Assembly (NCBI GenBank): GCA_904063045.1
Contig: CAJFCJ010000015.1
Location: 248,001-312,000, forward strand
Length of the DNA stretch: 64,000 bases
Direction of reading: 5' to 3'
Source of the DNA: Dimorphilus gyrociliatus
Taxonomy: Eukaryota > Animalia > Annelida
This document shows positions 18,081 to 63,102 of the stretch, piece after piece (the first letter of the stretch is position 1; every line of letters starts with the position of its first letter). The notes beneath the pieces are model-generated. The model was not told the origin of the DNA. It saw only the letters and a list, made by a program, of their open reading frames with translations, and did not search any database. Made by a program: the position numbers and the translations under genes.

Positions 18081-19327
18081 AATCGCGAAAACAAAGTTTC
18101 CACGTTTCCCAACGAAAATTGGACTTTATAGACTGGTATACTAGTGCGAGTACTTTGTAGATATACTCAAAGGTAAAAGAACCACCACTCAATATCTATG
18201 AAAGTAAATCATATCTACGTCTTGAAAAATGTTCCATTGAAATGCTAAAAGAAGTCTACAGTACTATCTCTAATCAAAGAAGATAAAGTTAAGTATTATA
18301 AATAAGTGTTTAATATTATGTTTTTGTTTTTACAAATAAATATTTTCTTGCAGCAAGTACTTTTGTATTCATTTACTATCAAAAACTATTTAACAATCGT
18401 TTCTAAACATTAAAGTATTGTATATAAGTTTACTTAATAGCAATATAGATAGCTTAGCCTACAAATTTTACCATGTTTTATATTGTACTGTCGGTCATGC
18501 ACCTTTTAAAGAAAAAGCTTGAATAATATACAAAAAAATTCATTAATCTTTCTATAAAGAAAAAATATTCTTGTTCTTTTAATGCAGAATTTCTTTTGTA
18601 GTTATAAATTTATATTACTTAATCTTTTTTGGTCGGAAATAAAATTTAATGAAAAAATAATAAAATAATAAAAATTACTTTTAATAAAGAACATTTTCTG
18701 TTCTTGTTTTAGAATGTTAGCTATGGGAGGCTGTATCTATAAACTATTGCAAATGTACACAGTATTTCGTAATAAGTATCCTTATTAAGTGTTGTACTTT
18801 TTTTTTGCTGATAGTATTACTTTGAAATGTGACTAAGTATTGAAAATTTTCCATTCATTCTTAGCTAATCAAAATCTTTATCTATTTATTCAAATAGCTG
18901 AGGAGAGTTATCTCTATTTTACTTATTAAAATAATTCATAGTAAGGAACTTTTTACTATTCAATAAACAAATATAAAAATTCCTTCCTTATTAGTATTGT
19001 GATAGATAGGACTATAAAAATTTTTCAAAGGTTCAAAAATACCGAATATTTAGGGAATAATGGAATAGAAAATTTATAGGTTTTGGTATCTGAACAAGTA
19101 TATAAATGAATTAAATTACAATGTATATATATTTATAATATACATATATATAAATATAATATAATATATTTATCACGTATTTGAGAAGATTGTAGCAGAT
19201 TTCTACCAAAAATCATTAAATATTTTAATGTACTAGGTCAAATTATAGATTGTCATACAACGATGAGCCTCTTTTAATTCTAGCAGACTTTTAGCAGAAA
19301 AGTCGTCCATTATGACCTTGGCCATTT

Positions 19328-22300
19328 ATGTACATATCTCAATCCACAGGCCTATTATCGCTCACTCCTCCTTCTCTTATGCTCTCAATTCCAGTAGCGT
19401 TTCATTTACTGAAAAGAGCTCTCATGACTGAATCGATGGCAGACAAGGTATGTAGATCATTCTTTACGCGAAGTTGTCATTCGACGATTATTATTATTTT
19501 ATCAATATTTTTCAATTTTTAATTTTTGCTTTCTTAAAGACTACTGAGTAACACGTGTAAAATATAAGATCTATGTAGTAAAAGGTTTGATCAGGTGAAG
19601 AATTAGGTTGTTCGTATAACTCTGTGTAAATAACTAATGGAAAGGGATACTGAGTTGAAAAAATTGACTCAGACATCATACAGACAAATATATTTTATCA
19701 CAAATCGATTATTCATTAATTGAAGGTTACTATATCTGCTCATGAATATTCAAACTAAATACTGCATAGCTTGATACTACTCGATCCATATTATAAAAAG
19801 TCAAACATTAGTACGATTCGTCAAAGTATTTTCATACTTATTCAGCCTTTTAGTAGACCACTTCCTTTTTTTGACATTTCCTGTGGAAAATGACTATAGA
19901 ATCGGTAAGTTTAGTGATATTTATTTTAAAAAAACACACATGTATTAAATTGATAAACAGTTGTTTTAACAAATAACTAGCTTTATTGTTGTAATTGTTA
20001 CTTTAAACGATAGATTTTAACATCTTGGAACAAACTATAAAAAATTAGCTTACCATATAAATTTATATATATGTATAAAGTATGGAAATCTGATATGGAA
20101 ACATTTCTATTTGTCCGGAATCGCTTTTAGTGTATTATTGTAGTTTATTACTTAAAATGGGACTAATTAGTGCAAATCTTTTATCCAGATCATGTAATGT
20201 GAGTTGAATTAGGAATTTATCGCAAATAATGGTTTGTTTCTAGTTCAAATTTTCTTAATAGTAATCACAAATAATGAAAACTTCCGGGTTTTATATGTTA
20301 CTTTTATCTTTATAAATAGACTGTTCAACTCATGATGTGATGGACATTGATTTTTATTCGTTATCTCTAAAAATAGCACAGTGATTTTTGATATAATATG
20401 TTTAGCAAATAATTCTACAGTTATGACTAATAACTTCCACATTATCGTCTTTTTCGATTTTGTGATCGTTAGGATAAGTCTTATTATACAATTCACCTAA
20501 GAGACTTTATACTTTATTCTTCAATAAACTTCAAAAGTGTTACTTAGTAATAAGCTCTTCCGATAAAATCACTACATTTAATTGAAAATTTCATATGTGC
20601 TCTCATGCTATAAATAGAGGCTTTTCTAGATTCATTTCCATTACTTGTTTTCTATTTTTAGATTGACAATATAATCAAGCCACTTCTATTGGAGGATGAG
20701 ACCTATACGAAGATAGGCAGGCTTCTTGAACAAGAAATGGCAAAAGGATTATCCAAAACAACTAATCCTTCCGCAAAGGTTAAAATGCTCCCTACTTACG
20801 TAAGAGCATTACCCAATGGGTTAGAGGAAGGAAATTTCTTGGCTTTGGATTTAGGTGGAACCAATTTTAGAGTTTTGCTTATATCTTTGAGCAAAGAAAG
20901 TGGAGTTAGAATGGAAAACAAAATCTATCCTGTTCCAGAAAAAATAATGACAGGAACTGGCAAAGAACTTTTTGACCATATTGCTTATTGTATATCTGAC
21001 TTTATACATGAGCATAACATTCAGGGGCAGGTCATTAGATAATTATCTATTCTTAAATAAATCTATTCAAATCAGTCTTTCTATTTTAATAGCATCTACC
21101 TTTGGGCTTTACTTTCTCTTTCCCATGCAAACAAGAAAGTTTATCTGTAGGACGCCTTATCTCATGGACAAAAGGTTTCAGCTGCTCTGATGTAGAGGGA
21201 GAAAATGTTGTAGATCTTCTCCATGCAGCTATCAAAAGGAGAAATGATATCAGCGTTGAATGCGTTGCAATTCTTAATGATACTGTTGGTTGTCTAATGT
21301 CTTGTGCTTATTTGGATCACGATGCTGAAATAGGCGTTATTCTTGGTACAGGTACAAATGCCTGTTACATGGAAAAGTTAGATAAAGTAGAATTATGGGA
21401 TCAGGATAAGGCTGAACCTAGTCAAGTTGTCATCAATACAGAATGGGGAGCATTTGGGGACGATGGTTGTCTGGACTTTATCCGTACTGACTATGACTTT
21501 CAAATTGATGAACGGTCATTAAATAGGGGTCGACAGCTGTAAGTTATTAATTGTTTCCCCTATATTTATAATAGACCTTTAATTAGTATTACGCATTCGA
21601 TATAGAAATAACGTTTAAAACAATACTTTCAAAATGAGTGAATAGAAACTGTATCTAACAATAATATTGTTTTATTAAATAACCAGACAAAATATCATAA
21701 AATAAATAATAATATGCTCTATTTCCGGGTAAGAAGTACTAGATTATATTGAATTTTTGATAAAGAGTCTATTTCTCAATTACAAAATTTTCAGTACGAG
21801 TCAATAAATAGTTGAGATATCGTGCAATTCTGATGAAATTTTTTATACAGGTTCGAAAAAATGATATCCGGAATGTACATGGGTGAAATTGTACGCTTGG
21901 TTGTTGTTGAATGTGTGCGTACGAGTCTCATGTTTTCTGGAGTTTTAGGACGTTTTAAAGAAAGAGATTGTTTCAAGACGAAGTACGTCTCAGCTGTTGA
22001 GAAAGATCATGGCAGAGGATCATTTGAAAATACAAAAAGAATTATTGAACAAATGGGCATAAAGGAATTCACTGATAGTGATTGTAGCGCCCTCTTTCGC
22101 ATTTGCCAGGCTGTCTCTATTAGAGCGGCCAAGTTGTCTTCCGCTGGTATATAATTTTTCAAATTATTATATGATTATAGTACTTTAATTGAAATTTTCC
22201 TCGTTTCCTACACAGCAATCGTAACATTAATGAATCGAATAAATAGGCCGAATATCACAGTAGCCGTCGATGGCAGTTTATTTCGCTTTCATCCAAGATT

Positions 22301-22436
22301 TGAGGGTGTAATGAAAGAAACTATTGCCGAAATGTATAATTTTGGGCATCAATTCAAATTAATGCTATCGGAAGACGGTAGTGGTAAAGGAGCCGCTTTG
22401 GTCGCAGCAGTTGCTCACCGACTAAAAAATAACTGA
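19328..22436 (+). CDS. HK: Hexokinase (single ~50 kDa domain), with two alternative first coding exons
   Basis: LALDLGGTNFRV, LGFTFSFPC, LNDTVG, GVILGTGTNACY, INTEWGAFG, FEKMISGMYMGE, DGSLF, SEDGSGKGAA. The common exon starts at 20662; first exons 19328-19447 or 19890-19904 both end in phase 0 at GT donors. Confidence 0.97.
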
Positions 22437-22917
22437 ACAACAGTACGAATGAGCTAAACGAGTTATTATTTACTAATTTCGGCTTTCTAATAGCTCATTG
22501 TATTAGTGATATTAGACAGTCTTATGCAGAATAAGTCTATTTTTTTCTCGTCCAGAAAAAATTTACCATTTTTAAAAGATAATTATTTTTTCCTCCTGCT
22601 TAATTCTTTTCTTTTCATTGAAATCTAATTGCACCCGGATACAATTGCTTTTTTTTGAGCAATTGGTTAAAAGCATAAACAATGGGAGGATGAATCTCTA
22701 ATTTTTCCTGCATGAAAACTTTACTGTAGTGCATCTCTAATCCCTCCTAGTAAACAGATTTTATCCTGTTGTCTCTTTTAATGTTTAACGTTTGTGGAAA
22801 TAAAGTTAATACAGGAAAATAGACTAGACTGTTGTAATATTTATTGGTAATTATAAAATACACATTCTCATTCTATTAATAGATTAAGGATACAATGAGT
22901 TTCGATGATTTTTAATA

Positions 22918-50298: not shown

Positions 50299-51669
<1,371 letters not shown>

Positions 51670-52768: not shown

Positions 52769-54926
52769 TCAGCGAATCCTGTCGCGATTTTCTAGTTCCA
52801 CATAGTCATAGGGATATGGAGCGCGAATAGAGGAAACGTCATCCAGCTCTTTTATCTTTCAGAATTGTAATTAATAAATGGTTAGCTTTGAAGTGGCTAT
52901 TTTTTTTCTATATACAAACCTCATCAATACTTAAACTCCAACCGCTGCCTGAATTATAATTATCTTCTAAATGTTTTACAGTTCTTGCGCCAATAACTAC
53001 TGATGGAACGTTTTCTTTTTCTAAAAGCCAACGTATTGCTACTTGGGGCACAGATTTTCCCTTAGCTTTCGATATTTCTTCGCACTTCTCTATTACTTTT
53101 AAAGCCCTTTGGGTATCCTCTTTAAACCAACTTGCGTCTGGATGGCTATTAGACGCCCTACCTTCACCAGAACTCGCCCAATCGATTCTAGAGCCTTTCT
53201 TAGGCTTCAGGGTGTCCTTGTCAATATTACCGCTCAACCATCCTCTGTAATATTCCTAAAGGGTTATTTTCTCTATCGACGGAAAAAACCTAACAACGCA
53301 ATTTACTGCCTATTCAATAAATAGTTAGAGAGGTACATTCATCACGATGGAAAACTGTCTTTTTTCTCAAAAGTAAAATAAGCTAAAAAAGAGAGTAAAA
53401 TTTACTTTGACGACCAAACTAAAATATTTGGACAAAGAAAGGAGTAGAGTTTTTCTACAGTATAGGCGTAATAAAGTAGTCATTCTCTCCTTCACTTTCT
53501 AGTTTAGTTCTATTTATTTTGTACTGTTTTACAAAGAATTTTGTTTTGCCTTTTTCTTTCCTCTTTCTTTCTCTTTGACGTATTTCGATTTTTTAAGAAC
53601 TTTTATCAATTGTTGGATTTTTTGTGTTAATCCATCGAGTTATTCTATATATAAATAATAAATCTTTTATTTTTTCTTATAACATAGAAATTAGATGAAG
53701 AATATGATCTGAGTAACTAAATATCACAGTAGATTTCTAACACTGTAATAATATATACTTTCCTAGATCGGACAACGTTATTAGAAAGACTTCTTTATGA
53801 GTAAAATTTCAATACTTTACATCAACAAAAAAACTATGTTCTCACTTTTTGTCTTTGTTACATTGATAGAAGACAAAACTTATATCTAAAAATATGATAA
53901 ATAATGATTATCTATTAACGAATTTCTGGCGGGAAAATTGTTTAAACGTGTGTAACAAATAATTAAATAGTAGAATATATTTACCTAATTCTATTATCAA
54001 ATACCTTATAAATTAGAATTCAAAAGATTGAATTTGATTAAATATTAATGTCTAATTATATGATTTAATTGAATTACCAGCATAAAGTAGTATATATTAT
54101 TATAATTACCCTTTCAAAGGACTCCATGGTAGCAGTGCAATTCCTTCGTTTCGACAAACTTCGGCTACTTCCCATTCGGTTGAACGACATAATAAATTAT
54201 ATTGCTGCTGTAAAGCAGCGATAGGATGCCAGTTTCGCTGTCTAGTTAGCTCGGCCGCTTTCTGCAGCTGCCAACCCTTAAGATTACTTAAGCCGATATA
54301 TCGAACTTTTCCATTTGATACTAAATCGTTCATAGCTTGTAAGCTTTCTTCTAGTGGAACACCAGCATCCCAAATATGAAGCTATTTTAAAAGGACATAA
54401 CTAATATTTATTCAGTCAAAACGTTATTACTACAAACGTAATATATGTCCAAATAAGATGTGCCTAATCTTTCTAAGGTTTGATCAATGCTCCACATAAT
54501 GTGTCTTCTACTAGCACCCATGCAATTTGGATTATTCGGATCCCAAATGCGACGAAACTTGCTAGCAATAACATACTTATTTCTATCTTTGTTTTCCAAC
54601 CACTTTCCAATTATTTTTTCTGAATCACCGTGTTGATAGGAATCGGCAGTATCGATAAAGTTACCGCCCCATGCAGTGTATTTGTCCAATATTTCAAAAG
54701 ATTCGTCCAAACCGCTATAAGGCCTATTACCCTGCGATAAGATTAAGATACCAATAAAAGAAACTGCGCGAAATTGGAATCATTAATATGAAAATCTTTG
54801 TTTGAAGTTAATATTGATATATTTAGAAATGCTTACAGGATGCCGTCCAAAAGTTAACGTTCCGAGGCATATGTTGGAGACTTTTAATCCACTTCTTCCC
54901 AACCAATTATAAACGCATTTACTCAT
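52769..54926 (-). CDS. Aldo-keto reductase (YajO / aryl-alcohol dehydrogenase-like subfamily), 5 exons
   Basis: LGRSGLKVSNICLGTLTFG, GGNFIDTADSY, IASK, SIDQTLERLGTSYLDIYY|LH, GKVRYIGLSN, LQQQYNLLCR, LPWSPLKGGWL, QVAIRWLL, IGARTVKHLEDN. Asp/Tyr/Lys/His tetrad present. Confidence 0.95.
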
Positions 54927-56540: not shown

Positions 56541-59500
56541 TTATTCATTGAACATTTTTCTATGTTCTTTATACATTTTAATATGTTTGAGGAAAACTTT
56601 TTCAACTTGTCGAAAAGGAGATTCTAGTGTTGCGCTGATAATGACGGAAAATAGGAGAGTTGCCGTCATGAAGGCAAGAAAGAAAGCCACCTGTAACAAA
56701 AATATTACATACAGAGTAAAATTTTACAGTAGGTAGTCGTATTTTAGAAAATACCAATGCTGAGTCGTCGACAATTAAATTGCTTTTAAGGGCTACTGCA
56801 TATGTCGTCATTATTATTGGGTGACTTAGGTAGGCGGCGTATGTCAATCTACTTGGTACCGTCCAGCCTTTCCAAGACAAGATTGAGTTGACTATTCCTC
56901 CATAGCCAGAGACACAACAAACAAGCACCCAGGATACGCATAAAGCCCATGCGGGTCTGTTCAGTGAATTATACAAAATTGAGGCAATAAGAGGTTGTTT
57001 AAATCCTCTGTTTTCTTCAATAGGTCCGTAAAATATGGCAAGTGCTACTGCAGTTGCAGTACACCATCCCAAAAGAGCTACAAATCTATTTATTTTAACT
57101 TTTAGATCGTATTTATATAGTATATAGCCCGTTAATATTCCAACTATATAAGCTCCAATTCTAGTCCATGGTGGTATGTAAAGTTGTCTCATATATTCTG
57201 TTGAACCACTGCAATAATAATATAAATATCATAAATATATTAAGGAAATATTTTTACTACTAACCCCATTGATATCATAGACATTGGAAACTTAAAGTGA
57301 CCCGAAATCACTGCTGAAACAATAATACTCGATGTTAAAACAAAAATATTTATGGCAATTCCTAATTTCGGTTTTCTGTATAAAGAGGAATTGTTTAGTA
57401 TAATTGTAAAAGCGAATATAAGATATCTAAATTAAGAACCTGTATAGAGGATAAATAAAAATTGGACTTAAAATGTAAAATTGCATGTCGTTGGCCAAAT
57501 ACCAAGCCCACCCGAAACACTATTGAAAAAAAAGAGAATTACTTGGATGATTTTTTTCAATTTATTATAACCTATTATTTTATATTACCTGCATTGCTGA
57601 TGATTCCCATTTTCCAAATGCTATGTTATTCAAGTAGAGTAAATTTTGCCACCACATACTATAGCATTTAGGAGCCAAGCCGACGTTATTGGGATAGAGT
57701 GGACCAGTCGCCCAATAACGTGAGAGAGTTGTCATTGCAGCCAATAGAAGCATGTACATTGGCGTCAGTCTATATTTACATTATAAAGTGTAATATAAAA
57801 AATTATCATATTATTCATCAAATTACCTCCAAAATCTGTGAAAATAATAATAAAACCAATTAACTCCACCTTTCTTTAATTCTTTTAATGTTAAGTAAGC
57901 GACCAAGGTTCCACTAAAAAGTAGAAGAAAAATAAGGAATAATAGTGATTTTTTTTTTGATTTAGAAACCAAATTTACCTCATCATAAAAAATGTATCTA
58001 CTGACGGTGTTGCATTTGCAATAGGTTGGAATGACCATCTTTTGAAAAGAGTTAAAAGAAAAATAGGATTTCCAATCGCACTTAAGACAAACAAAAACGT
58101 ATGCCCCAAAACTACCCATGATAAACTAATAAATCGTATTCCGTGTAGACAAGCGACATCAGATTGTGCGTCACTTACCAACAAAGACCGTAAATTTTTT
58201 ATAAGCGAAAAAGATAAAATCGAATCCTGAACAATTCCTAATTTGTTTTGTGAAAAATACACCCGGAAATTAGAATTTGTATTATTGATTTCCGGAAAAT
58301 CATTAATTGAGGTGGTATCTTCTGCAATGAGATGTTCTGTATCTTCGGTTTTCTTACTTTGAAAATATGCTCCAAAAAAATCATAAATTGTTGCAATCAA
58401 TACCAGAAAACCTAAGATTGCAAATATAGCTCTGAAAATAATATAAAAGGATATTATTGTTTTTAAGTACAATTAATAAAAAAGGAACTACTACTGTATA
58501 TTTAAATTATTAACTATGAAATATTAAAGTTAATGTCAGTATCATAGAGGTTTTCATCTATTATTCTAAATTAATAAGAAAATACATACATAGTTGCTTT
58601 GGCTCCATTATCTAACGGTGGGATTTCTGCTTTGGTGACACTACCAACATGATATGATGAGTTGAATGGTAAGAGAACTATAAGAAAAAACAAATAAGTG
58701 AAAGGTGTTTAACTGTTCATTACTTGTATGTATATACATACAATTTACGTAATTGAATACTTCGATGTTTGTGCATGTATCAGGTAGGCATATTCCAATA
58801 ACTGGTGCTAGAAAAGGTAAAGAACTCTGTTCGCCAAGAAAAAAGAAAGAGTTCAAAAGGTTAAACAAAGTTCAAAAACTAGGAGACTTATCTACCGGTA
58901 TGTTTTTACCCTAGAATAGGGGCATACAACATCTGATTAACATTTAATAACTAAATGAAATGTATCTTGATGAACTAGTTAGATAATATTATTTAACTTT
59001 AGTATCTATCAATAAACAACATTTCGCAATATTCTATGCGTCATCGAAATGTGACTAAGACTGTACGCTATTTTAAGAAGCATATTAGAATTCTCTTATT
59101 CTTTACCTTCGATTTTTTGGCAAACCCAATTGTGAAATAGTTAACATCAAAGTTTGTCAGATTCGTTCGTGGAACATTAACGCCTTTACATTGTGGAAAG
59201 CTACCTTTAACTATAATGTGTCCTTGAAGAATTCCAGGTGGAAGTTTAGCCCACGAATCGAAAACTAGAAAAAAAATGTAAACAAACAAAATCAAAGCAA
59301 TAAAATGATATTAGAAAACATATAAATAATTAAAATAATAAATTTACCTTCAATAGCCCATTTTTGTCGTTTTGAAGCACTTAAACCGATATTTTTGAGA
59401 TCAAGAAGACATGTGTTATTTAGATTTTTATTTTTTATACTTTTAAGAGTGTTTTCAGCCTGCTTTTGATAATCATCAGCTTTTAAAAATGATAGTGCAT

Positions 59501-59684
59501 TCTTTAAAGATTTATGATTTTCAATATCTTGCAAACTATTTTCCAGATTTCTAATAAACTGATGTGCTCCAATGTAGATATTATCCTTTAGTAAAGGATG
59601 AAGCGGCTTATCATTTGTAAATAATTCTTTGCCATTACATTGTAAAATACTGATGACGAAAATTAAGTAGACGCCAACATACAT
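56541..59684 (-). CDS. Nose-resistant-to-fluoxetine-6 / O-acyltransferase-like protein (signal peptide, NRF domain, Acyl_transf_3 membrane domain), many exons
   Basis: Signal peptide MYVGVYLIFVISILQCNG; FDSWAKLPPGILQG...GSFPQC; ICLPDTCT; LHGIRFISLSWVVLGHT; VDTFFMMS; HRFWRLTP; WWQNLLYLNN; WAWYLANDMQFY; PWTRIGAYIVG; SRLTYAAYLSHP; LESPF. Confidence 0.93.
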
Positions 59685-60964
59685 ATCTATTTTAATCAAT
59701 AATATATTTGTTAACTCCTTTTATTTAATGATGATTTCGATTAAAAACAACGCATTTGCTCTTAACACTACTAAAAACGAACGATAGGAGGCGCTAATTC
59801 GTCGAAAATTGTTTAGAATGTTTGAAGTCCACAAATGGCGGATACAAAAGAGAGAGATTTTCTGCTAAAATATTCTCTTATTCTTATTAGTCATCGATTA
59901 TATAGGACTTTTAAAAATTAATATAGGTCTCATTACTTTGAAATTGTTAACATATGCTACATTTTTACCCTTATAAGGGCATTTCATATTAGAGAATAGG
60001 AATAATATGAAATTAAATCTATTTCATATTCGTAACGCTATATGCTTTGTTCATGTGTTTTTTGTTTAGATTTTGAGGTCATTGAACGACTGAACTTTGA
60101 ATCTACATTACGTAGTATAATTTCGTAAATCAAAGCACCTAAAACGCTATTTTCTATTGTGTATATATATTTTATTACTTTTATTGATAGAAAACAGCAG
60201 TAGTTAATAAGTTTAATAGTATATTTTGTATTTAGTAATAAGAAGTATAAAGTACCAGAGTTCAGCTATTAAAGTATTCTTTTTCTAATTTATTTTTATT
60301 GTTATTTAATCAAATATCGTAACTCTAAAGTTTAAAATGTGAAAAAAGTATATAAAGGAAGATAAGATGTGTGTTTTTACTACAAATCGTTACAAGTTCG
60401 ATAAGAAAATAGTCTGCAATTGTTGTAGATGACGCCACTATATATCGAAAACGTTTCTTCATAAATCTCTAGGCTATTGCAACGTCCCGGATTAGCGTGG
60501 TGTCAGAAGATTCTATTTGCCGATATTAGGTAATAATATGAAAAATTGTAGCAAGAACAATATTTCAAAAAGGTCAAACACATTGATTTTAAGTATAATT
60601 ATGTAATTATATCCCTAAGCAATTCTAAGAGAACAAACTTTAGAGAACAAAATATTTCAAGGTTATAATTATTCTTCTCACGTCCTATGATGAAATTTTA
60701 TATAATCGACTATATAAAAGATATAAATATAAGCATTATACGTATAACTCTTGGATCAAACGTATCATAGTTGTTAATCTTTTGTCTCAGTGAACTTAGC
60801 GATGTATGTTTCTAATTGTTTTTAGAATTAACTATTAAACAAATATGTATAAAGTAATTTGAAATTATTAAATTATTCAACTGCTTTATCAAAACTAATT
60901 TGATAATTATTATTTAATTTATTATTAATCAATGAATCTATTTGTTTAAGCTTTACGTATCATT

Positions 60965-63102
60965 ATGGAATTTCCGGCAAAGTCGAATGTAAAACACTGG
61001 ATACAGACGTTAAATGATATAAGAGAATATAAAGAGTACATTAAAGCAGGATCATTAGAAATAGATGGTGAAACTTTAACAATATCAAAACTCTATGCAA
61101 TGACCTTCAAACCTAGTTTTGAATGTTCAATTACGGAGAAGTGCTGTGATAAAATGAAAAAGAATTATGAGTTTTTCACTGATTTATTAAAATCTGGAAA
61201 AGTTGTCTACGGTGCAAATACCGGTTATGGTGGTAGTGCTAATGTTCGATACGAGAGCGTTGCTAAAGTTCAGGAATATTTGGTTAGTCATCTGAAAGCT
61301 GGTTTTGGTAGAAAAGCGCCTACAGAATTGATTCGAGGTATATTTGAAATTACACAAATAATTAAAAGTTCTATTAAATTACTTCTTCTTTTAGGTGTTA
61401 TGGTTCAAAGGGCTAATAGTCTTTCTAAGGCACGTTCTGCTGTCCGCGAAGAGGTTCCGTTACTATTATTAGAAATGGTACGCAAAGACATCGTTCCTAT
61501 AGTTCCTCTCAGAGGAACTGTTTCCGCAAGCGGAGATTTAATGCCAAGTTCATATATTGCTGCTGCAATGATGAATATGAAAGGATCAAGAGTTCTACAC
61601 AAAGGTGTTGAAATGGAGGCCAGCGAAGCATTCCAGTTAGCTTCTGTTAAACCTGTAGAGTTCCACGCGAAAGAAGCTTTGGCTGTTGTTAATTCATCTT
61701 CATTTGCCGCTTCATTAGGCAGTTGCATGTTGTTCGAAGCCAACGTTTGTGCCATACTTGTACAAATATGCACAGCATTAATAGCCGAATCTTTGGAAGG
61801 TCATTTAGAATCTTTCCACTCACTTTTGCATGAATCAATGCCTCATCCTGGCCAATTGGAGTGTGCTGCTAATTTATCATCACTTCTGAATAATTCTAAA
61901 ATGTCAATAACTGATCTAGAAATGAGAAGGGAGGATTCCAAAGGACTTAAGCAGGTATATCTTATTAAAGAATGATTTTTACAATCTGGTTAATATAGAT
62001 CTTTTCTAATAGGATCGTTATGCTTTAAGAACATCACCGCAGTGGGTAGCACCAGTACTAGATACACTATTAAGATCAAGAGAAAAACTGGAAATAGAAC
62101 TAAATAGTTCAAACGACAATCCTTTAATTGATGACGAAAGAGGTGTTGTAATTCACGGTGGAAACTTTCAAGGAATATCTGTATCTATGGGTTTGGATCA
62201 CGCACGACAAGCAATTCAATTGTGTGGAAAATTGCTACACGGTCAATTTCAAGAACTCGTGAATGGTTCAATGAATGGCAATCTTACCCCAAATTTATGT
62301 GGTTCGGATTATAATGTAGATATGGGATTCAAGGTTTTTTATTAAATTATTTATTGAATATAAAATAAATTAATAATCAATTTTGTCTTTGACATTCTTA
62401 CAATCAGGGTTGCGATACTGCAATGGCAGCGTATTGCTCTGAACTTGACGGCTTAGCAAATCCAGTTACAAATCATGTATTGAGTGCCGAACTCCATAAT
62501 CAAGCCATTAACTCAATGGGATTTTTGTCGGCTCGAAAACTTGAAGAATCAATAGAAGTTCTAAAACAAATGATTGTACAGAGCCTAGTAGCAACCTGTC
62601 AGGCAATTGACTTGAGATATCTTAAAAATTATGCTGAGGCCATCATTAAGACAATTTTAAATGAGCACAAACTAAACGAAAAGACATTCTACAGAGTATG
62701 CCCTTGGTGGGTGTTGGTTTTTTCACCTCCAGAAGCTGAAGTGAGACTGAAAGAGATATCTCCTTTCATGAATGGCCTAAGATTTAAAGACTTTTTAAGT
62801 GAGTTTGAAGAAGTGGCTAAGCCCGTTTTGGAGAGTATAAAAAATGGAACACTTGTTGATCGAATATCCGATGAATTAGGATATGGTAACATGCATATAA
62901 TTTCTTTATTATATAATTTTGGTTATAATTTATTAATTTCATTTTAGGTACAAAAAAGGTTTATCGATTTCTTCGTCAAGAACTTAATATTAAATTTAAT
63001 ATAGGAGCAAATAGTCTTGATAAAGATATGGAAAAAGTTCTTTCTTGTATCAATTCTCAAAAAATACTCGACCTACTCCAAGAAATTGAGTTATACAGTT
63101 AA
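60965..63102 (+). CDS. PAL: MIO-dependent aromatic amino acid ammonia-lyase/aminomutase of PAL/TAL type (not histidase), 5 exons, 628 aa
   Basis: Exons 60965-61337, 61395-61954, 62013-62333, 62408-62885, 62948-63102 (1887 nt). VYGANTGYGG lid Tyr, GTVSASGDL MIO triad, KEALAVVN, HPGQLE, KQDRYALRTSPQW, NSSNDNPLID, HGGNFQG, GFKG, AAYCSEL, LANPVTNHV, SAELHNQAINSMG, CQAIDLR, VYRFLRQEL. Confidence 0.95.

What the first reader, a model, noticed from the sequence alone, without database searches (positions are those of the whole stretch)
61283..61300. His-Leu selectivity switch predicts tyrosine acceptance (bifunctional PTAL)
Seen: QEYLVSHLKAG, with His at 61289-61291 and Leu at 61292-61294, and a Glu in SAELHNQ. 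Established: this residue pair is Phe-Leu in strict PALs (parsley F137/L138), His-Leu in Rhodobacter TAL (H89) and grass PTALs, His-Gln in Rhodotorula PAL/TAL, and Ser-His in histidases. The Glu equivalent to parsley E484 is PAL-type, whereas bacterial TAL/TAM have Asn. Inference: His-Leu plus Glu is the combination of bifunctional PTALs, which would give p-coumarate directly from Tyr without a cinnamate 4-hydroxylase. The usual NGT motif reads NSS here, a further active-site deviation.
Basis: partly seen in the sequence, partly recalled or inferred. Interest (0 to 1): 0.72.

Follow-up and report, generated by a model that had tools for sequence, protein, structure and literature searches.

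The report
Worm tyrosine-type ammonia-lyase: His/Thr pocket
A tiny marine worm transcribes and splices a gene for a plant/fungal-type enzyme that strips ammonia from aromatic amino acids, and two coupled pocket residues (His109 and Thr422) predict, without proving, that it accepts tyrosine and would make p-coumaric acid, a compound animals are not known to make.

Summary
Codons 61289-61294 encode His109-Leu110 of a five-coding-exon gene (60965-63102, +). The product is identical to public protein DgyrCDS10259 of Dimorphilus gyrociliatus (628 aa). Alignments place the pair on sorghum PTAL H123-L124, parsley PAL F137-L138 and histidase Ser-His. A public contig skips all four coding introns exactly, so the gene is transcribed. 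The worm also has a separate canonical histidase.

His at the switch is the accepted marker of tyrosine acceptance. I found a second signal: Thr422, at parsley I460, the residue that blocks para-substituted rings. Across 135 relatives His and Thr change together (about 11:1 independent pairs, p about 0.006). Paralogs in annelids, bivalves and Lingula carry either His..Thr or Leu/Phe..Ile.

The supporting arguments fail. Glu is present in all 134 of the 135 tabulated PAL-type sequences that cover the column, so it says nothing. NSS is typical of the animal clade. The protein is not a grass PTAL, and nothing tests activity on Phe. His looks like the common, probably older, state outside plants.

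An earlier follow-up of this scan (s1-080617) already reported the gene family. New here are the pocket analysis and the coupling. Substrate choice remains a prediction.

The parts
60470..60529 (+). Non-coding 5' exon (the start is only as far as the public contig reaches)
   Evidence: The 58-nt loose 5' end of the spliced contig maps at 60498-60527. The donor reads ...GATATTAG|gtaata.
60530..60950 (+). 5'-UTR intron, 421 nt, GT..AG
   Evidence: acceptor ...gtttaag|CTTT.
60951..61337 (+). First coding exon (ATG at 60965; residues 1-124 plus the first base of G125). It holds catalytic Tyr82 and the switch.
61289..61294 (+). Selectivity-switch codons His109-Leu110 (PcPAL F137-L138; SbPTAL H123-L124)
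   Evidence: Alignments; family table.
61338..61394 (+). Intron 1, 57 nt, in frame and free of stops
   Evidence: The contig joint skips 57 nt, GT..AG. The ORF reads through it.
61395..61954 (+). Coding exon 2 (residues 125-311), with the MIO triad and N224-S225-S226
61526..61534 (+). Ala169-Ser170-Gly171, precursor of the MIO cofactor
   Evidence: Aligned to SASGDL of PAL structures. S170 and G171 are invariant and A169 nearly invariant in the 54-sequence alignment.
61691..61699 (+). Asn224-Ser225-Ser226 (NGT in plant and fungal PAL). Asn is kept.
61955..62012 (+). Intron 2, 58 nt
62013..62333 (+). Coding exon 3 (residues 312-418): Tyr314, Arg317, Asn347, Phe363, Lys418
62334..62407 (+). Intron 3, 74 nt
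62408..62885 (+). Coding exon 4 (residues 419-577 plus the first base of G578)
62417..62419 (+). Thr422, at the PcPAL I460 para-pocket position, coupled to the switch His
62489..62491 (+). Glu446 (PcPAL E484), universal in eukaryotic PAL-type enzymes
62886..62947 (+). Intron 4, 62 nt
62948..63102 (+). Last coding exon (residues 578-628, TAA at 63100-63102)
   Evidence: The contig covers it up to 63064.

Best explanation
The gene encodes a cytosolic, MIO-dependent aromatic amino-acid ammonia-lyase of the eukaryotic PAL type. It belongs to a clade found in annelids, bivalves and a brachiopod. Ala169-Ser170-Gly171 should cyclise into the MIO electrophile. Tyr82, Tyr314, Arg317, Asn224, Asn347, Phe363, Asn449 and Gln450 are all in place for ammonia elimination. 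The ring pocket carries His109 where strict PALs have Phe, and Thr422 where they have Ile. Together these give a hydrogen-bond partner and extra room at the para position. I therefore infer that the enzyme accepts L-tyrosine and releases p-coumarate plus ammonia, probably with some activity on L-phenylalanine as well. Shown here: gene structure, transcription, family, residue correspondences, and the His/Thr coupling. Inferred: substrate, product and physiological role.
For: Gene model and transcription: the five exon translations are identical to DgyrCDS10259, 628 aa. A 1,923-nt public contig skips all four introns exactly, with no mismatches. Family: PF00221 matches on four exons. TIGR01226 phe_am_lyase scores 500.5 bits, far above PAM at 343 and HAL at 285. 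The AF2 model has pLDDT 91.6 and matches PcPAL, SbPAL, TcPAM and RtPAL at TM 0.82-0.88. Catalytic residues are all conserved. Switch: H109 aligns with SbPTAL H123 and PcPAL F137. The closest relative fragment keeps SHLKAG. Second determinant: Thr-460 occurs in 30 of 51 His-type animal sequences and in 2 of 30 non-His ones. In independent pairs the changes go the same way about 11:1 (p about 0.006) over all rows and about 8:1 (p about 0.04) in animals. Column 422 is the column most associated with the His state. The Lingula tandem array holds H-I..T, H-I..T and L-I..I copies. Literature: His marks (P)TALs, and F144/I469/E493 of AtPAL1 are the three pocket determinants. PcPAL I460T raises kcat/KM on p-methoxy-Phe from 0.007 to 0.617 and keeps Phe activity. 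The worm has a separate canonical histidase.
Against: No enzyme assay or metabolite data exist. Solved or cited His-type enzymes keep Ile at 460 (Rhodotorula P0027; the Joinvillea PAL crystallised with tyrosine), so the His+Thr pocket is uncharacterised. The preprint shows that PAL-like enzymes with unusual pockets can have unexpected substrates, or none of the known ones. Several further pocket-side differences (S108, K111, S225/S226, C420, L447) have unknown effect. The protein sits on a long branch (1.26), which suggests fast evolution. TIGR01226 falls just below its curated cut-off. No obvious downstream user of p-coumarate was found: no type III PKS, no phenolic-acid decarboxylase, and no recurrent gene neighbour.
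Confidence: 0.55

Rival explanations
1. The physiological substrate is another ring-substituted aromatic amino acid, such as L-DOPA, a 3-substituted or halogenated tyrosine, or O-methyl-tyrosine. The His/Thr pocket would then be tuned to that ring and not to plain tyrosine.
For: Thr at the 460 position opens the para pocket to a group larger than OH (the p-methoxy result). AtPAL3 shows that small pocket changes redirect these enzymes to 3-carboxy-tyrosine, and PAL3-like enzymes have unknown substrates. The pocket differs from every characterised PTAL at several positions.
Against: Wherever it has been tested, His at the switch goes with activity on plain Tyr. Nothing in the genome context points to a special substrate.
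Confidence: 0.2
2. It is in practice a phenylalanine ammonia-lyase. His109 would be an inherited state with little effect, so Tyr turnover is negligible.
For: His is widespread in fungi, a chytrid and unnamed fusion proteins, so it looks like the older state outside plants and not an adaptation of this worm. PcPAL I460T keeps full Phe activity. Glu446 is the residue required for PAL activity in AtPAL1.
Against: In the animal clade His has repeatedly been replaced by Leu or Phe, together with Thr to Ile, in paralogs. This is hard to explain if the His state were functionally equivalent.
Confidence: 0.12
3. It is an aminomutase that makes a beta-amino acid (beta-tyrosine or beta-phenylalanine) and not a lyase.
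For: The fold matches Taxus phenylalanine aminomutase as well as it matches PAL (TM 0.85-0.88). A Lamellibrachia relative carries an automatic 'aminomutase' name.
Against: The PAL model outscores the PAM model on the whole protein (500 against 343 bits) and on every exon. The automatic name only reflects a best hit. Lyase and mutase cannot be told apart from sequence with these tools.
Confidence: 0.06
4. It is the worm's histidase, or an inactive relic.
For: The Pfam family is the same.
Against: A separate gene with the Ser-His motif and an animal HAL-type layout lies on contig C9. The HAL models score only 285 bits. All catalytic residues are intact, and the gene is spliced and transcribed.
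Confidence: 0.03

Closest known systems
Grass bifunctional phenylalanine/tyrosine ammonia-lyase (PTAL), e.g. Sorghum bicolor SbPAL1, PDB 6at7
   Same: His-Leu at the switch, aligned residue for residue. Glu at the E484 position. MIO triad and all catalytic residues. Eukaryotic PAL fold (TM 0.85).
   Different: About 32% identity. It lies in a separate animal clade. It has Thr, not Ile, at the 460 position, NSS not NGT, L447 not Gln, and S108/K111 flanking the switch. It is about 75 aa shorter, and its C-terminal 120 residues are not matched by the PAL profile.
Fungal PAL/TAL, e.g. Rhodosporidium toruloides PAL (PDB 1y2m/1t6j)
   Same: Best PDB sequence match for exon 2. His at the switch. Glu484. 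Fungi make up one of the neighbouring clades in the tree.
   Different: The Rhodotorula type is His-Gln with Ile at 460. Only a few uncharacterised fungal sequences (Cronartium, Chytriomyces, Clohesyomyces) share the H-L..T pocket.
Parsley PAL (PcPAL, 1w27/6f6t) and its engineered I460T variant
   Same: Best structural match, with identical catalytic machinery. The I460T variant mimics the worm's Thr422 and accepts para-substituted Phe.
   Different: PcPAL has Phe137 and is a strict PAL. The worm enzyme has His.
Bacterial tyrosine ammonia-lyase (Rhodobacter sphaeroides TAL, 2o6y)
   Same: His-Leu switch (H89 by position arithmetic).
   Different: Only a weak sequence match (E 0.25-0.74). RsTAL is a short enzyme of about 520 aa without the eukaryotic C-terminal region.
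Animal histidine ammonia-lyase
   Same: Same superfamily and MIO chemistry, and present in the same genome.
   Different: It carries Ser-His at the switch, is a different gene on contig C9, and scores much lower against the window protein.

Membership tests
MIO-dependent aromatic amino-acid lyase/aminomutase superfamily (Pfam PF00221) | Domain match above the curated cut-off | tested here: met
   Four exons each score above the 27.3-bit cut-off (51 to 162 bits) at consecutive profile positions 1-450.
MIO-dependent aromatic amino-acid lyase/aminomutase superfamily (Pfam PF00221) | Ala-Ser-Gly triad that forms MIO | tested here: met
   A169-S170-G171 aligns to SASGDL of PAL structures.
MIO-dependent aromatic amino-acid lyase/aminomutase superfamily (Pfam PF00221) | Catalytic and carboxylate-binding residues (PcPAL Y110, N260, Y351, R354, N384, F400, N487, Q488) | tested here: met
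   Y82, N224, Y314, R317, N347, F363, N449 and Q450 are present.
Phenylalanine ammonia-lyase equivalog (NCBIfam TIGR01226) | Whole-protein score of at least 519.15 bits | tested here: not met
   The score is 500.5 bits, the best family by far but just under the cut-off. The match covers profile positions 22-517 of 680, so the C-terminal part is not matched.
Phenylalanine ammonia-lyase equivalog (NCBIfam TIGR01226) | Phe at the substrate-specificity site (PcPAL F137) | tested here: not met
   His109 occupies the site.
Grass PTAL (bifunctional PAL/TAL) | His at the specificity site within a PAL-type (Glu484) active site | tested here: met
   H109 aligns with SbPAL1 H123, and E446 with E484. Glu is universal, however, and so not informative.
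Grass PTAL (bifunctional PAL/TAL) | Descent within the monocot/plant PAL clade | tested here: not met
   The protein lies in a 99%-supported animal clade, separate from the plant sequences.
Grass PTAL (bifunctional PAL/TAL) | Measured activity on both L-Phe and L-Tyr | not testable with these tools
   This needs an enzyme assay.
Bacterial TAL/TAM type | Short architecture of about 500-540 aa with Asn at the E484 position | tested here: not met
   The protein has 628 aa and Glu446. The BagA/FlxA TAL and Tyr 2,3-mutase models score 235-260 bits against cut-offs of 501-1000.
Histidine ammonia-lyase | Ser-His at the specificity site | tested here: not met
   The pair is His-Leu. The Ser-His gene is elsewhere in the genome.

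The most novel reading that the evidence does not exclude
Lophotrochozoan animals run their own entry step into hydroxycinnamate chemistry. Under this reading they carry two functional classes of PAL-type enzymes: a tyrosine-type (His137 with Thr460) and a phenylalanine-type (Leu/Phe137 with Ile/Leu460). These classes have interconverted repeatedly through a coupled two-residue switch in tandem paralogs. The compact D. gyrociliatus genome keeps only the tyrosine-type, so this worm would make p-coumarate, or a related ring-substituted cinnamate, directly from an amino acid without a cinnamate 4-hydroxylase.
Probability: 0.35. Interest if true: 0.75.

Novelty: new member of a known kind. Interest (0 to 1): 0.55.

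Why it matters
Textbooks place PAL/TAL in plants, fungi and some bacteria, and animals are thought to have only the histidase branch. An animal enzyme that is transcribed, conserved across lineages and built to take tyrosine would mean some invertebrates make hydroxycinnamic acids themselves. That bears on their UV screens, on cross-linked secreted materials, on phenolic defence compounds, and on possible ring precursors of other metabolites. The His137/Thr460 coupling is also a testable two-residue rule for predicting substrate choice in uncharacterised PAL-like sequences. Natural paralog pairs in Capitella, Lamellibrachia, Mytilus and Lingula offer ready-made experiments. My literature searches found no description of the animal clade. 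They covered only open-access full text and bioRxiv.

Tried and rejected
1. Joined spliced protein. All window searches were exon by exon and by reference. The full-length analyses used the public record P0194 after showing that each exon translation is an exact substring of it.

2. Word search from the window. The longest stop-free reference is 336 aa, so it cannot reach relatives of 600-720 aa. I used the representative search instead, then the word search with relative P0003.

3. Encoding contigs. The look-up of encoding contigs had no record for P0194 or P0197.

4. Gene neighbourhood as a clue to the pathway. Only tandem PAL-type copies recur. An O-methyltransferase lies beside the Owenia pair, but the worm's only Methyltransf_2 gene is on another contig. 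The window neighbours are an NRF-6-type acyltransferase, an aldo-keto reductase and a calmodulin-like gene. I found no support for a biosynthetic cluster.

5. Downstream enzymes. The genome shows no type III polyketide synthase (PF00195) and no phenolic-acid decarboxylase (PF05870).

6. Papers on an animal PAL/TAL. Four searches found nothing relevant.

7. Residue-level structural superposition on PcPAL or RsTAL. The fold tools return no coordinates or per-residue alignment, so the register rests on sequence alignments, which agree with one another.

8. RsTAL alignment. The match is too weak to be printed, so H109 = H89 rests on position arithmetic. The statement that bacterial TAL/TAM carry Asn at the Glu position was not tested.

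9. RNA evidence. Only one run holds the gene, its library type is not on record, and it is kept as contigs. Expression level, tissue and stage are therefore unknown.

Full report
**What is there.** The finding lies in a + strand gene with short GT..AG introns.
- The coding exons are 60965-61337, 61395-61954, 62013-62333, 62408-62885 and 62948-63102.
- Pfam PF00221 (Lyase_aromatic) matches exons 1-4 at consecutive profile positions 1-88, 90-257, 269-377 and 379-450.
- Each exon translation is an exact substring of the public protein DgyrCDS10259 of Dimorphilus gyrociliatus (P0194, 628 aa), with Gly at the two split codons.
P0194 served as the referable full-length protein.
- A 1,923-nt contig from a public 2017 run skips exactly the four introns (57, 58, 74 and 62 nt) with no mismatch. 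It also carries 58 further 5' letters, the last 30 of which match 60498-60527. This reveals a non-coding first exon ending at 60529 and a 421-nt UTR intron.
- The gene is therefore real, spliced as modelled and transcribed.

**The observation.** Codons 61289-61294 are His109-Leu110, and the register is right.
- Query SHLKAG aligns to RHLNAG of sorghum PTAL 6at7, to RFLNAG of parsley PAL, and to RSHSSG of a histidase. His109 thus falls on H123, on F137 and on Ser.
- By position arithmetic it also falls on RsTAL H89.
- SAELHNQ aligns to SAEQHNQ of plant PAL, so Glu446 equals E484.
- VVNSSS aligns to LVNGT.
- All catalytic positions are present: Y82, A169-S170-G171, N224, Y314, R317, N347, F363, K418, N449 and Q450.

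**It is not the histidase.** The genome holds exactly two MIO-family genes.
- The second, on contig C9, reads ELQENLIRSHSAG, the Ser-His signature.
- The window protein scores 500.5 bits on the PAL equivalog TIGR01226 (cut-off 519.15). It scores 343 on Taxus PAM, 285 on HAL and 235-260 on bacterial TAL/TAM models.
- An AlphaFold2 model (pLDDT 91.6, pTM 0.93) matches parsley PAL, sorghum PAL, Taxus PAM and Rhodosporidium PAL at TM 0.82-0.88.
- The PAL profile does not cover residues 505-628, so the C-terminal region is divergent.

**The family.**
- The representative search and the word search with relative P0003 find close relatives of about 570-680 aa.
- These come from annelids (Ridgeia, Capitella, Lamellibrachia, Owenia, Helobdella), bivalves (Mytilus, Mya, Dreissena, Pinctada, Ruditapes, Mercenaria, Mactra) and the brachiopod Lingula.
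- They are followed by fungal and plant PALs at about 40-45% identity to P0003. The worm protein itself is 30-35% identical to those fungal and plant sequences.
- In a tree of 135 sequences built without the trait columns, the animal sequences form one clade with 99% support.
- The worm protein sits on a long branch (1.26) at the base of the annelid subclade.
- This agrees with an earlier follow-up of this scan (s1-080617), which had already reported the family. I re-derived it independently.

1. *Glu.* Every eukaryotic PAL-type sequence that covers the column has Glu at the E484 position, whatever its switch residue. 'His-Leu plus Glu' therefore carries no more information than His-Leu alone.
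2. *NSS.* Most annelid and many bivalve members read N-[S/A]-x, while venerid bivalves, fungi and plants keep NGT. NSS is a clade trait, and the catalytic Asn is kept.
3. *His.* Within animals the switch pair is HL (the commonest), HV, HI, HS, LL, FL, LV, SV, AV, VL, TL, LM or FM. Many fungi, a chytrid and some unnamed long fusion proteins also have His. His therefore looks like the common, probably older, state outside plants and not an innovation of this worm. The closest relative fragment (P0012, 60% identical) keeps SHLKAG.

**A second determinant.** The column most associated with the His state in animals is the worm's position 422, which corresponds to PcPAL I460.
- Thr occurs in 30 of 51 His-type sequences and in only 2 of 30 others.
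- On phylogenetically independent pairs, Thr follows His about 11 to 1 over all rows (median p 0.006) and about 8 to 1 within animals (p 0.04).
- Recent paralog pairs switch both residues together, for example Capitella a/b, Mytilus b against a/c, and P0157 against P0156.
- The Lingula tandem array has two H-I..T copies and one L-I..I copy.
- The worm has His109 and Thr422.

**What the literature says about these positions.**
- A 2026 preprint shows by mutagenesis that AtPAL1 F144, I469 and E493 set substrate choice. These equal PcPAL F137, I460 and E484. It also shows that His marks (P)TALs, and that enzymes with unusual pockets can have unexpected substrates (3-carboxy-tyrosine) or unknown ones.
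- Saturation mutagenesis of parsley PAL shows that I460 sterically excludes para-substituted rings. I460T raises kcat/KM on p-methoxy-Phe from 0.007 to 0.617 while keeping Phe efficiency at 6.33 against 6.30.
- The H89F switch of Rhodobacter TAL is cited in PMC9002059.

**Interpretation.**
- The most likely reading is a lyase whose pocket is adapted to a para-substituted ring. His109 would act as hydrogen-bond partner and Thr422 would give room. That makes L-Tyr to p-coumarate the likeliest reaction, probably with Phe also turned over.
- The His+Thr pocket is uncharacterised. The solved or cited His-type enzymes for which I could read the 460 column keep Ile there (Rhodotorula P0027, and the Joinvillea PAL crystallised with tyrosine).
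- Another ring-substituted amino acid therefore remains a serious alternative, and aminomutase activity cannot be excluded from sequence.

**Context.**
- No neighbour other than tandem PAL-type copies recurs across species.
- The window neighbours are ordinary animal genes.
- The genome shows no type III PKS or phenolic-acid decarboxylase.
- The fate of the product is unknown.
- Four literature searches found no description of an animal PAL/TAL. The library covers only open-access papers and bioRxiv.

**Verdict.** The enzyme is a new member of a known enzyme kind, in an unusual host lineage. The tyrosine prediction is now backed by a second, coupled pocket residue, but it remains untested biochemically.

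Noticed in passing
G000:C9:2134971-2136693 (-), locus L002: This is the worm's canonical histidine ammonia-lyase. It reads ELQENLIRSHSAG and GASGDLAPL, with an N-terminal extension exon. The genome therefore holds exactly two MIO-family genes.
   Followed up: partly
window 61338-61394: Intron 1 is 57 nt, in frame and free of stop codons. If retained it would insert 19 residues just after the switch helix. The one transcript contig available has it spliced out.
   Followed up: partly
proteins P0002, P0014, P0019, P0023, P0036, P0070, P0087: These very long proteins (1,150-2,535 aa) carry a PAL-type domain. One, from a Candidatus Omnitrophota MAG, has two matched stretches. The switch reads HL, HH, FL or ME in five of them and was not read in two. 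P0002, P0019 and P0023 group near the animal and fungal clades in the tree. Their other domains were not examined.
   Followed up: no
L010:10001-11494 and L012:10001-11809: Orthologues P0160 and P0170 are single uninterrupted ORFs on Mb-scale ENA contigs, so they are apparently intronless. The Dimorphilus, Owenia, Lingula and Ridgeia genes have introns.
   Followed up: no
L008 (Owenia fusiformis), 18732-22586 (-): A plant-COMT/ASMT-type O-methyltransferase (PF08100 + PF00891) lies about 6 kb from a tandem pair of PAL-type genes. This was not seen at the other loci, and the Dimorphilus Methyltransf_2 gene is on another contig.
   Followed up: partly
proteins P0010, P0203/P0229, P0181/P0192: Several animal members have odd catalytic columns. 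Owenia P0010 has Phe at the catalytic Tyr351 position. The Pinctada copies have Ser-Ser-Gly in place of Ala-Ser-Gly. Two Mytilus copies have Glu at Gln348. These may have altered or lost activity.
   Followed up: no
window 56602-59699 (-): An NRF-6-type (Acyl_transf_3) membrane acyltransferase gene lies head-to-head with the lyase, about 770 bp from the lyase's 5' exon. An aldo-keto reductase lies at about 52900-54710 (-) and a calmodulin-like gene at 51430-51669 (+). I found no evidence that they act together with the lyase.
   Followed up: partly
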